A DNA stretch of 63,570 nt, counting the filler, from Octopus bimaculoides (taxonomy: Eukaryota), in assembly GCF_001194135.2 (NCBI RefSeq). It is 9 parts of 8 records of this genome, joined end to end, with 100 filler letters (N's around TTAATTAATTAA, not from the genome) between each part and the next. Parts side by side here need not be neighbours in the genome. Positions count along the whole stretch, not along the records: positions 1 to 12,142 come from NC_068983.1; 8 more parts are not named here. One strand, 5' to 3'. A program made the position numbers and the translations under genes. Below, piece by piece: positions 98-375 of the stretch; position 1 is the stretch's first letter, and each line of letters starts with the position of its first letter. A model generated the notes under the pieces. The model was not told the origin of the DNA, did not search any database, and saw nothing but the letters and a program-made list of their open reading frames with translations.

Positions 98-375
98 CTG
101 TCATACCGGCCATGATGAAATACCACAAGGTATAGAAAATACGTATTCGCCTTTATATATATATTTAATCCTTTATATTGAACACTCAATATTTCATCTA
201 TTCAATAAGACATATTCCATATATTCAATAAGACATTCAATACTTTATTTCATTGTACCATCCATTTTTATATTATATATTGTATATTCCATATTCTATA
301 TCCCACATTAATTTTACAAGAATATCAATAAAACATAAAAAACAGTTGGAACTCTTTTAAACAAAATAATATATA
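98..375 (+). mobile_element. Hammerhead-headed AT-rich dispersed repeat, copy 1 (PLE pLTR-like or retrozyme-like non-autonomous element)
   Basis: Body (tttatattgaacactcaatatttc...aataaaacataaaaaacag..ttggaactcttttaaacaaaataa) recurs at 35351-35575, 58571-58866 and 62593-62825; begins with a hammerhead fold. Confidence 0.75.
104..156 (+). ncRNA. Minimal type-I hammerhead ribozyme variant (core CAUGAUGA)
   Basis: Stem I GGC(108-110)/GCC(149-151); core CATGATGA 111-118; stem II ATACC-acaa-GGTAT 120-133; GAA 135-137; palindromic stem III AATACGTATT 138-147; cleavage-site C148. Confidence 0.7.

What the first reader, a model, noticed from the sequence alone, without database searches (positions are those of the whole stretch)
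104..156. Covarying hammerhead ribozyme family with a non-canonical 8-nt core C-[A/U]-UGA-N-GA (copy 1)
Seen: three copies (104-156, 35362-35405, 58576-58624) fold into the same minimal type-I hammerhead with different helix sequences. Stem I is GGC/GCC in two copies and GGAC/GTCC in the third. Stem II is ATACC/GGTAT, TTGC/GCAA or AGGG/CCCT. Stem III is a palindrome: AATACGTATT, AGTATACT or ACTCGAGT. All three carry one extra nucleotide between C3 and U4 (CATGATGA, CTTGAAGA, CATGACGA). Known: Penelope-associated minimal hammerheads with palindromic stem III cleave as dimers, and the canonical core is CUGANGA. Inference: compensating changes imply selection on the RNA fold, so the expanded core is probably a functional variant that CUGANGA-based searches would miss. 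I cannot confirm whether this variant has been described.
Basis: partly seen in the sequence, partly recalled or inferred. Interest (0 to 1): 0.88.

Follow-up and report, generated by a model that had tools for sequence, protein, structure and literature searches.

The report
Solo Penelope-type hammerhead motif, one-base-expanded core
A 58-base inserted fragment in an animal genome folds like the small self-cutting "hammerhead" RNAs carried by Penelope-like jumping genes, but has one extra base in the catalytic core; whether it still cuts, or belongs to a family, could not be tested here.

Summary
The motif is exactly where and as described. It reads GGC / C-A-UGAUGA / A / AUACC-ACAA-GGUAU / A / GAA / AAUACGUAUU / C148 / GCC (108-151).

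It is the only hammerhead-like hit in the piece. Chance expectation is about 0.001 (equally good) to 0.04 (relaxed) per 12 kb, after allowing 13 core variants.

It sits on a 58-nt segment of 41% GC (94-151). That segment is bracketed by the only two copies of TTTATATATATA in the window, in 21%-GC flanks. This looks like a retroelement insertion into a (TA)n target.

Real Penelope-like elements (PLEs) that I fetched carry hammerheads of the same architecture: a mismatch flanking stem II, a 6-9 nt palindromic stem III, and a (TA)n target. All about 43 of them have 7-nt cores; none has the extra base.

Rfam and a covariance model built from canonical PLE hammerheads both miss the candidate. Rfam also misses genuine PLE hammerheads, and my model misses the matching architecture.

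The other two copies, covariation and activity could not be tested. Published insertions next to C3 nearly abolish cleavage.

Verdict: probably a genuine PLE-derived minimal hammerhead relic. The "functional 8-nt core family" remains a hypothesis.

The parts
82..93 (+). Left copy of the 12-nt direct repeat TTTATATATATA (putative target-site duplication in a (TA)n run)
   Evidence: This 12-mer occurs only at 82 and 152 in the whole window.
94..151 (+). 58-nt inserted segment carrying the hammerhead-like motif (AAGTCTGTCATACC + motif)
   Evidence: 41% GC against 21% in flanks 1-93 and 152-445; bracketed by identical 12-mers.
108..110 (+). Stem I, 5' strand (GGC)
   Evidence: Pairs with GCC 149-151.
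111..118 (+). Expanded catalytic box C-A-UGAUGA. C111 = C3, A112 = extra base, U113-A118 = U4-A9
   Evidence: C111 can still pair with G117 (the 3-8 pair).
119..119 (+). Unpaired A after A9
   Evidence: [quoted passage not shown] It is present in nearly all PLE hammerheads fetched.
120..133 (+). Stem-loop II: AUACC / ACAA / GGUAU (5 bp, tetraloop)
134..134 (+). Unpaired A before G12; with A119 it forms an A.A mismatch at 10.1/11.1
   Evidence: The same layout (N...N flanking stem II) occurs in PLE hammerheads L126 12992, L150 1846, L153 3658 and L156 2158.
135..137 (+). G12 A13 A14 of the GAAA box
138..147 (+). Stem III: 10-nt perfect palindrome AAUACGUAUU (A15.1 = A138, U16.1 = U147). It cannot close as a stable hairpin and pairs between two copies
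   Evidence: RNAcofold gives the dimer -23.5 kcal/mol against 2 x -6.6, with a 10-bp intermolecular stem III and stems I formed in trans.
148..148 (+). C17; predicted cleavage 3' of this base
   Evidence: Its position follows from the hammerhead numbering (inference). No cleavage data.
149..151 (+). Stem I, 3' strand (GCC)
152..163 (+). Right copy of the 12-nt direct repeat TTTATATATATA

Best explanation
Positions 94-151 are a short retroelement-derived insertion into a (TA)n microsatellite of an animal genome. The insertion carries a solo minimal type-I hammerhead motif of the kind found in the terminal repeats of Penelope-like elements (PLEs). It most resembles the architecture I found behind C-terminal-endonuclease PLE reading frames that also target (TA)n.

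If transcribed, one copy cannot close stem III. Two copies would pair through the 10-nt palindrome into a double hammerhead, in which the core of one copy is presented with C148 of the other. Cleavage would fall between C148 and G149.

The motif departs from every hammerhead I could retrieve by one extra base (A112) between C3 and U4. I think this extra base was most probably inherited from the source element rather than acquired in place. I also think it makes the ribozyme at best weakly active.

Shown: the sequence anatomy, its rarity under shuffling, the flanking 12-nt repeat and GC contrast, the predicted dimer, and the match to real PLE hammerhead architecture and target.

Inferred: PLE origin (no PLE reading frame is present in the piece), inheritance of A112, and any catalytic activity.

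This copy has no evident role for the host.
For: - It is the only hit in the window. Chance expectation is 1.7e-4 to 1.8e-3 for this class, and 0.0011 to 0.039 with 13 core classes allowed. There were no hits in 785 kb of unrelated DNA.
- A 58-nt island of 41% GC sits between the only two TTTATATATATA copies, in 21%-GC flanks.
- PLEs are highly 5'-truncated, carry hammerheads near their 3' ends and prefer (TA)n targets (PMC8557442). Most genomic minimal hammerheads occur as single motifs thought to be truncated PLEs (PMC4209133).
- PLE hallmarks are present: an extra nucleotide after A9, a palindromic stem III and a short stem I.
- Fetched PLE loci show the same layout: N.N flanking a 3-4 bp stem II, a 6-9 nt palindromic stem III, and an element end abutting TATATATA. 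These are L126 12992/12805, L150 1846, L153 3658 and L156 2158.
- The predicted dimer is about 10 kcal/mol better than two monomers and is exactly the double hammerhead.
- All 13 helix pairs and the other 10 core bases are intact, and the flanking repeats are 12/12 identical. This argues against heavy decay.
- With C111 read as C3, the C3-G8 pair is kept. That pair covaries in real PLE hammerheads: U3-A8 and G3-C8.
Against: - No PLE reading frame lies in the 12 kb, and only 103 nt are available upstream.
- The PLE hammerheads I fetched lie 38-55 nt before the element's 3' end. Here the insert ends exactly with stem I.
- No Rfam hammerhead hit at E <= 10.
- My covariance model from six canonical PLE hammerheads scores the candidate below 6 bits.
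- 0 of about 43 PLE hammerhead instances have the extra base.
- G10.1-C11.1, called highly conserved in PLE hammerheads, is absent.
- Insertions beside C3 and after A6 are strongly deleterious in published tests.
- Only one copy is visible, so nothing here shows selection.
Confidence: 0.6

Rival explanations
1. It is a genuine PLE-derived hammerhead, but the extra A112 is a private mutation of this dead copy (a one-base insertion after integration). In that case there is no '8-nt core' family, and the ribozyme here is simply broken.
For: Every PLE hammerhead I retrieved has a 7-nt core. Scattered genomic copies do carry single core lesions, such as G12C in L123 13352 and U4C in L135 853. Only one copy is visible here.
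Against: The flanking repeats are 12/12 identical and all 13 helix pairs are intact, so little mutation has accumulated. A lone indel landing in the core is then a low-probability event.
Confidence: 0.22
2. It is a chance look-alike. AT-rich, microsatellite-rich DNA happens to contain TGATGA, GAAA, a palindrome and short complementary runs in the right order.
For: Allowing 13 core classes and relaxed helices gives 0.039 expected hits per 12 kb, which means thousands per gigabase genome. The monomer fold z-score is 0.17. Stem I is only 3 bp. Rfam and the covariance model R1 do not see it.
Against: It lies on a compositionally distinct 58-nt segment bracketed by a unique 12-nt repeat in the preferred PLE target.
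Confidence: 0.13
3. It is a different small RNA, for example a box C/D snoRNA-like element, because AUGAUGA next to a terminal stem resembles box C.
For: There are weak Rfam alignments to snoZ30a and SNORD104 over 107-152 (10-11 bits, E about 7-9).
Against: These scores are far below the gathering cut-offs of 40-80 bits. No CUGA (box D) occurs anywhere in 104-156. The region is 44 nt, far shorter than those models.
Confidence: 0.02

Closest known systems
Minimal hammerhead ribozymes of Penelope-like elements (Cervera & de la Pena 2014, PMC4209133; Lunse, Weinberg & Breaker 2017, which I could not read here)
   Same: Type-I topology, short stem I, an extra nucleotide between A9 and stem II, a GAAA box, a palindromic stem III that requires dimerisation, occurrence as single scattered motifs, and (TA)n insertion context.
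   Different: There is one extra base between C3 and U4 (an 8-nt box). An A.A mismatch replaces the G10.1-C11.1 pair described as highly conserved. The palindrome is longer (10 nt). No PLE reading frame or terminal repeat is visible in this piece.
'Type B' PLE hammerheads found here (L126 12992/12805 Glandiceps; L150 1846, L153 3658 and L156 2158, which are host-DNA contigs in MAGs)
   Same: Unpaired or mismatched bases on both sides of a short stem II with a small loop. Stem III is a 6-9 nt palindrome. The element inserts into (TA)n. The motif lies downstream of a PLE reading frame with a C-terminal endonuclease.
   Different: They have canonical 7-nt cores (CUGAAGA, CUGACGA, or UUGAUAA with U3-A8). 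They are followed by a 38-55 nt element tail before the (TA)n.
Saltern-derived hammerheads with insertions 2a/2b beside C3 (Perreault et al. 2011, PMC3088659)
   Same: A natural insertion in the strand joining stem I to the U-turn of the core.
   Different: There the insertion is 5' of C3, and C3 stays next to U4; the sequences come from halophile virus or metagenome sources. Activity was nearly lost and needed about 300 mM Mg2+, and removing the insertion restored fast cleavage. Here the extra base separates C3 from U4.
Double-hammerhead (dimeric) self-cleavage of newt satellite and viroid RNAs (Forster et al. 1988, as cited in PMC4209133)
   Same: A weak or palindromic stem III is stabilised only when two copies pair.
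   Different: Those are tandem satellite or viroid repeats. This is a solo copy with no neighbouring partner within 12 kb.

Membership tests
Hammerhead ribozyme (type I) | Conserved 5' box C3-U4-G5-A6-N7-G8-A9 (7 nt) | tested here: not met
   The sequence is C-A-UGAUGA, 8 nt. The alternative reading, A3 with a bulged C110 in stem I, also violates the consensus.
Hammerhead ribozyme (type I) | G12-A13-A14 box followed by the A15.1-U16.1 pair closing stem III | tested here: met
   G135 A136 A137; A138 pairs with U147.
Hammerhead ribozyme (type I) | Three helices around the core, with stem I open | tested here: met
   Stem I has 3 bp and stem II 5 bp. Stem III has 5 bp as a palindrome, or 10 bp in the dimer.
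Hammerhead ribozyme (type I) | Non-G nucleotide at position 17 (cleavage site) | tested here: met
   C148.
Hammerhead ribozyme (type I) | Match to curated covariance models (Rfam hammerhead families) | tested here: inconclusive
   No hammerhead hit at E <= 10, even on 141 nt. However, bona fide canonical-core PLE hammerheads L124 11613 and L126 12992 also give no Rfam hit.
Hammerhead ribozyme (type I) | Site-specific self-cleavage giving 2',3'-cyclic phosphate and 5'-OH ends | not testable with these tools
   This needs a transcription and cleavage assay.
PLE-associated minimal hammerhead | Unpaired nucleotide between A9 and 10.1 | tested here: met
   A119; the feature is described in PMC4209133.
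PLE-associated minimal hammerhead | G10.1-C11.1 pair | tested here: not met
   A119/A134 or A120-U133 takes its place. Four PLE-linked hammerheads fetched here also lack it.
PLE-associated minimal hammerhead | Short palindromic stem III (dimer-dependent) | tested here: met
   AAUACGUAUU; the dimer is predicted at -23.5 kcal/mol.
PLE-associated minimal hammerhead | Location in the pseudo-LTR, downstream of a PLE RT/GIY-YIG reading frame | tested here: inconclusive
   No RT/EN frame lies near it. The piece starts 103 nt upstream. The motif lies on a 58-nt insert in (TA)n with a 12-nt flanking repeat.
PLE-associated minimal hammerhead | Similarity to a profile of PLE hammerheads | tested here: not met
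   Model R1 (6 seeds) finds about 40 hammerheads in PLE loci but scores the candidate below 6 bits with filters off. R1 also misses the type-B examples.
Box C/D snoRNA | Box C (RUGAUGA) and box D (CUGA) brought together by a terminal stem | tested here: not met
   Box C-like AUGAUGA is present, but there is no CUGA in 104-156. Rfam scores are 10-11 bits against cut-offs of 40-80.

The most novel reading that the evidence does not exclude
The source genome (probably a cephalopod) harbours a large lineage of Penelope-type hammerheads whose catalytic strand is C-N-UGANGA. Its helices covary, and it still self-cleaves as a dimer with the extra base flipped out while C3-G8 is kept. That would be the first natural, active hammerhead with an insertion between C3 and U4. 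It would also be a class invisible to every CUGANGA-based descriptor and to Rfam, and it might explain some PLE lineages reported as lacking canonical hammerheads.
Probability: 0.2. Interest if true: 0.7.

Novelty: new variant of a known kind. Interest (0 to 1): 0.42.

Why it matters
Hammerhead cores are among the most tightly conserved RNA motifs. Genome censuses of ribozymes and of PLE or retrozyme elements rely on the 7-nt CUGANGA box.

If a whole lineage works with an 8-nt box, several things would follow:
- Those censuses would undercount hammerheads.
- The reported absence of hammerheads from some PLE clades would need re-examination.
- The structural tolerance of the U-turn/C3-G8 region would be wider than mutational studies suggest.

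If instead the extra base is a private lesion or inactivating, this is one more of the many thousands of solo PLE hammerhead relics in animal genomes. In that case it is ordinary.

Tried and rejected
- **Strict descriptor** (no unpaired bases around stem II): no hit. It had to be relaxed.
- **Rfam**, whole piece and a 141-nt slice: only low-complexity miRNA-like and snoRNA noise.
- **Second copy or tandem unit in the piece**: none.
- **Metagenome scan** for TGANGA-N(8-30)-GAAAATACGTATTC: 120+ matches, about what chance predicts, and none folds as a homologous hammerhead.
- **Recovering more of the source genome**:
  - 11 window ORFs are not in the protein collection.
  - The mariner-like fragment finds nothing.
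  - The RT fragment finds relatives of at most 82% identity. Their contigs (L129-L131) are a different genome, with 30% GC, no microsatellites and no hammerheads.
- **Viral-contig scan with a PLE protein**: nothing.
- **Covariance model R1**: does not detect the candidate.
- **A type-B model**: not built, because MAFFT could not align the seeds in register.
- **blastn of 61-330 against all fetched loci**: only trivial matches.
- **snoRNA reading**: rejected because there is no box D.
- **Mariner identification of 446-1560**: could not be confirmed.
- **Supplements of the two key PLE papers, and Lunse et al. 2017**: not held. I therefore cannot exclude that the variant is listed there.

Full report
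**What is there.** The window is animal-like DNA. It has about 36% GC, many microsatellites, an assembly gap at about 7030-7595, a fragment of a non-LTR reverse transcriptase at 9092-9385(-), and a tRNA-derived SINE-like sequence near 5330-5480(-).

At 108-151 the + strand reads GGC | C A UGAUGA | A | AUACC ACAA GGUAU | A | GAA | AAUACGUAUU | C | GCC. Positions 10.1/11.1 are therefore an A.A mismatch and not G-C. This is why my first, strict descriptor found nothing.

**Is it more than chance?**
- A relaxed descriptor required stem I of at least 3 bp, stem II of at least 4 bp with 0-1 unpaired base on each side, GAA, an A...U-closed stem III of at least 3 bp, and H17. It returns this site and nothing else on either strand.
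- The same holds with ten alternative cores and very loose helices.
- In 6000 dinucleotide shuffles the C-N-UGANGA class is expected 0.0018 times per 11.6 kb. A hit with helices as good as here is expected 1.7e-4 times.
- Allowing canonical, six one-base-insertion and six one-wildcard cores raises this to 0.039 (relaxed) and 0.0011 (as good).
- 785 kb of unrelated metagenome DNA gave no hit of this class.
- For one 12-kb piece the motif is therefore unexpected. For a gigabase genome, hundreds of equally good chance hits would exist, so context matters.
- The monomer's predicted stability is unremarkable (z = 0.17), as expected for a motif whose stem III cannot close on itself.

**Context.**
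- The motif lies on a 58-nt segment (94-151) of 41% GC, set in flanks of 21% GC.
- The segment is bracketed by TTTATATATATA at 82-93 and 152-163. These are the only two occurrences of that 12-mer in the window.
- This is what an insertion with a target-site duplication into a (TA)n run looks like.
- Penelope-like elements are usually 5'-truncated, carry hammerheads near their 3' ends, and several clades prefer (TA)n targets (PMC8557442).
- Most genomic minimal hammerheads occur as single motifs interpreted as truncated PLEs (PMC4209133).

**Comparison with real PLE hammerheads.** I could not reach the source genome. I therefore fetched PLE loci from other animals.
- A PLE RT/EN consensus recalled from memory served only as bait, and retrieved 4856 real proteins.
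- Eight loci came from the look-up of encoding contigs. Another 36 host-DNA contigs hidden in bacterial MAGs came from a genome-contig scan. Together this is about 465 kb.
- My descriptor, plus a covariance model built from six canonical examples (R1), found about 43 hammerhead instances. They typically lie 40-200 nt after the PLE reading frame, often as inverted pairs.
- Two architectures appear. Type A has CUGANGA, then one base, then G10.1...C11.1, then GAA, then a 4-nt palindrome.
- Type B has unpaired or mismatched bases on both sides of a 3-4 bp stem II and a 6-9 nt palindromic stem III. Examples are L126 12992/12805, L150 1846, L153 3658 and L156 2158.
- The type-B elements end 38-55 nt further on, directly against TATATATA.
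- The candidate matches type B in every respect except the extra A112. A119/A134 and the long palindrome are therefore not defects but family traits.
- Core variation does exist in these elements: U3-A8, G3-C8 (L122), U4A (L127, flanking an intact reading frame) and U4C (L135). The 3-8 pair covaries. No instance has an insertion between C3 and U4.

**Model-based tests.**
- Rfam gives no hammerhead hit for the candidate, even at E <= 10 on 141 nt.
- As a control, two genuine canonical-core PLE hammerheads also give none. The Rfam negative is therefore uninformative.
- R1 scores the candidate below 6 bits with filters off. R1 also misses the type-B examples, so this shows only that the candidate is not type A.

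**How it would work.**
- RNAcofold predicts that two copies form the double hammerhead. Both stem-loops II are kept, stem III is a 10-bp intermolecular helix, and the stems I form in trans. The energy is -23.5 kcal/mol against -13.2 for two monomers.
- Each active site would combine the core of one copy with C148 of the other. Cleavage would fall between C148 and G149 (inference from hammerhead numbering).
- With C111 as C3, the C3-G8 pair is preserved and A112 would have to bulge out. An alternative register (C111-G149, C110 bulged, A at position 3) keeps a 7-nt box but loses that pair.
- Published evidence is discouraging. Natural insertions 2a/2b next to C3 leave very low activity unless Mg2+ reaches about 300 mM, and deleting them restores fast cleavage. 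An insertion after A6 is also poor (PMC3088659).
- Canonical metazoan PLE hammerheads are themselves weak in vitro.
- I therefore expect weak or no activity. This solo copy also has no partner within 12 kb.

**What remains open.**
- The family claim and the covariation rest on two copies outside my piece.
The extra base would then be inherited, not a private lesion.
- The intact helices and the identical flanking repeats also argue mildly against a post-insertion indel.
- None of this shows function. PLE lineages without canonical hammerheads proliferate well, so a crippled ribozyme could be carried along.

**Novelty.**
- PLE minimal hammerheads, their dimer dependence and several core variants are known.
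- I found no description of an insertion between C3 and U4. I could not read Lunse et al. 2017 or the supplements of the PLE papers.
- I rate the finding a possible new variant of a known kind, of moderate interest. The decisive tests are a genome-wide search and a cleavage assay.

Noticed in passing
L122 9110-9152(-) and 12128-12170(+): A Branchiostoma PLE is flanked by an inverted pair of minimal hammerheads whose core is GUGACCA. C3-G8 is swapped to G3-C8, a compensated change of the core pair different from the published U3-A8 variant.
   Followed up: partly
L127 9899-9939(-) and 11617-11657(+); L135 853-894: Hammerheads flanking an intact 523-aa PLE reading frame have the core CAGACGA (U4 replaced by A). 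Another locus has CCGAUGA (U4 replaced by C). U4 is normally invariant.
   Followed up: no
L126 12992-13036(+)/12805-12841(-), L150 1846-1888, L153 3658-3694, L156 2158-2196: This is a second PLE hammerhead architecture: mismatched bases on both sides of a 3-4 bp stem II, and a 6-9 nt palindromic stem III. The elements end 38-55 nt downstream against (TA)n. Rfam (tested on L126 12992 only) and my type-A covariance model both miss it.
   Followed up: partly
L132-L167 (GTDB genome contigs): 36 contigs filed under bacterial MAGs encode animal Penelope-like RT/endonuclease frames with hammerheads. They include ten contigs of one Stappiaceae MAG, several Poribacteria MAGs and a SUP05 bin. This is evidently host-DNA contamination of the bins.
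   Followed up: no
window 5330-5480 (-): A tRNA-derived SINE-like sequence is present (GGCGCAATGGCATAGTGGTTAGGACAGCGGTCATAGGATCGCGGTTTCGATTCCCAGACC...). ARAGORN calls no tRNA. From memory it resembles the abundant octopus SINE, which would make the source a cephalopod. This is not verified with tools.
   Followed up: partly
window 446-1560 (+): This stretch reads like a degraded mariner-type transposon: a TTAGGTTG-like end at 446 and a ...YYDIAPANYYLF... motif. Pfam and the protein search return nothing, so the call rests on memory only.
   Followed up: partly
window 9092-9385 (-): This is an internally deleted fragment of a non-LTR retrotransposon reading frame. The best relatives are 77-82% identical over 43% of the query, and some are named reverse-transcriptase proteins of the coral Porites.
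   Followed up: partly
L001, L038, L090, L094 (metagenome contigs): Four related contigs share a repeat containing UGAUGAG...GGGAAAAUACGUAUUC, with GAGAU/AUCUC flanks five bases away from the box. It is not a well-formed hammerhead, and its nature is unknown.
   Followed up: no
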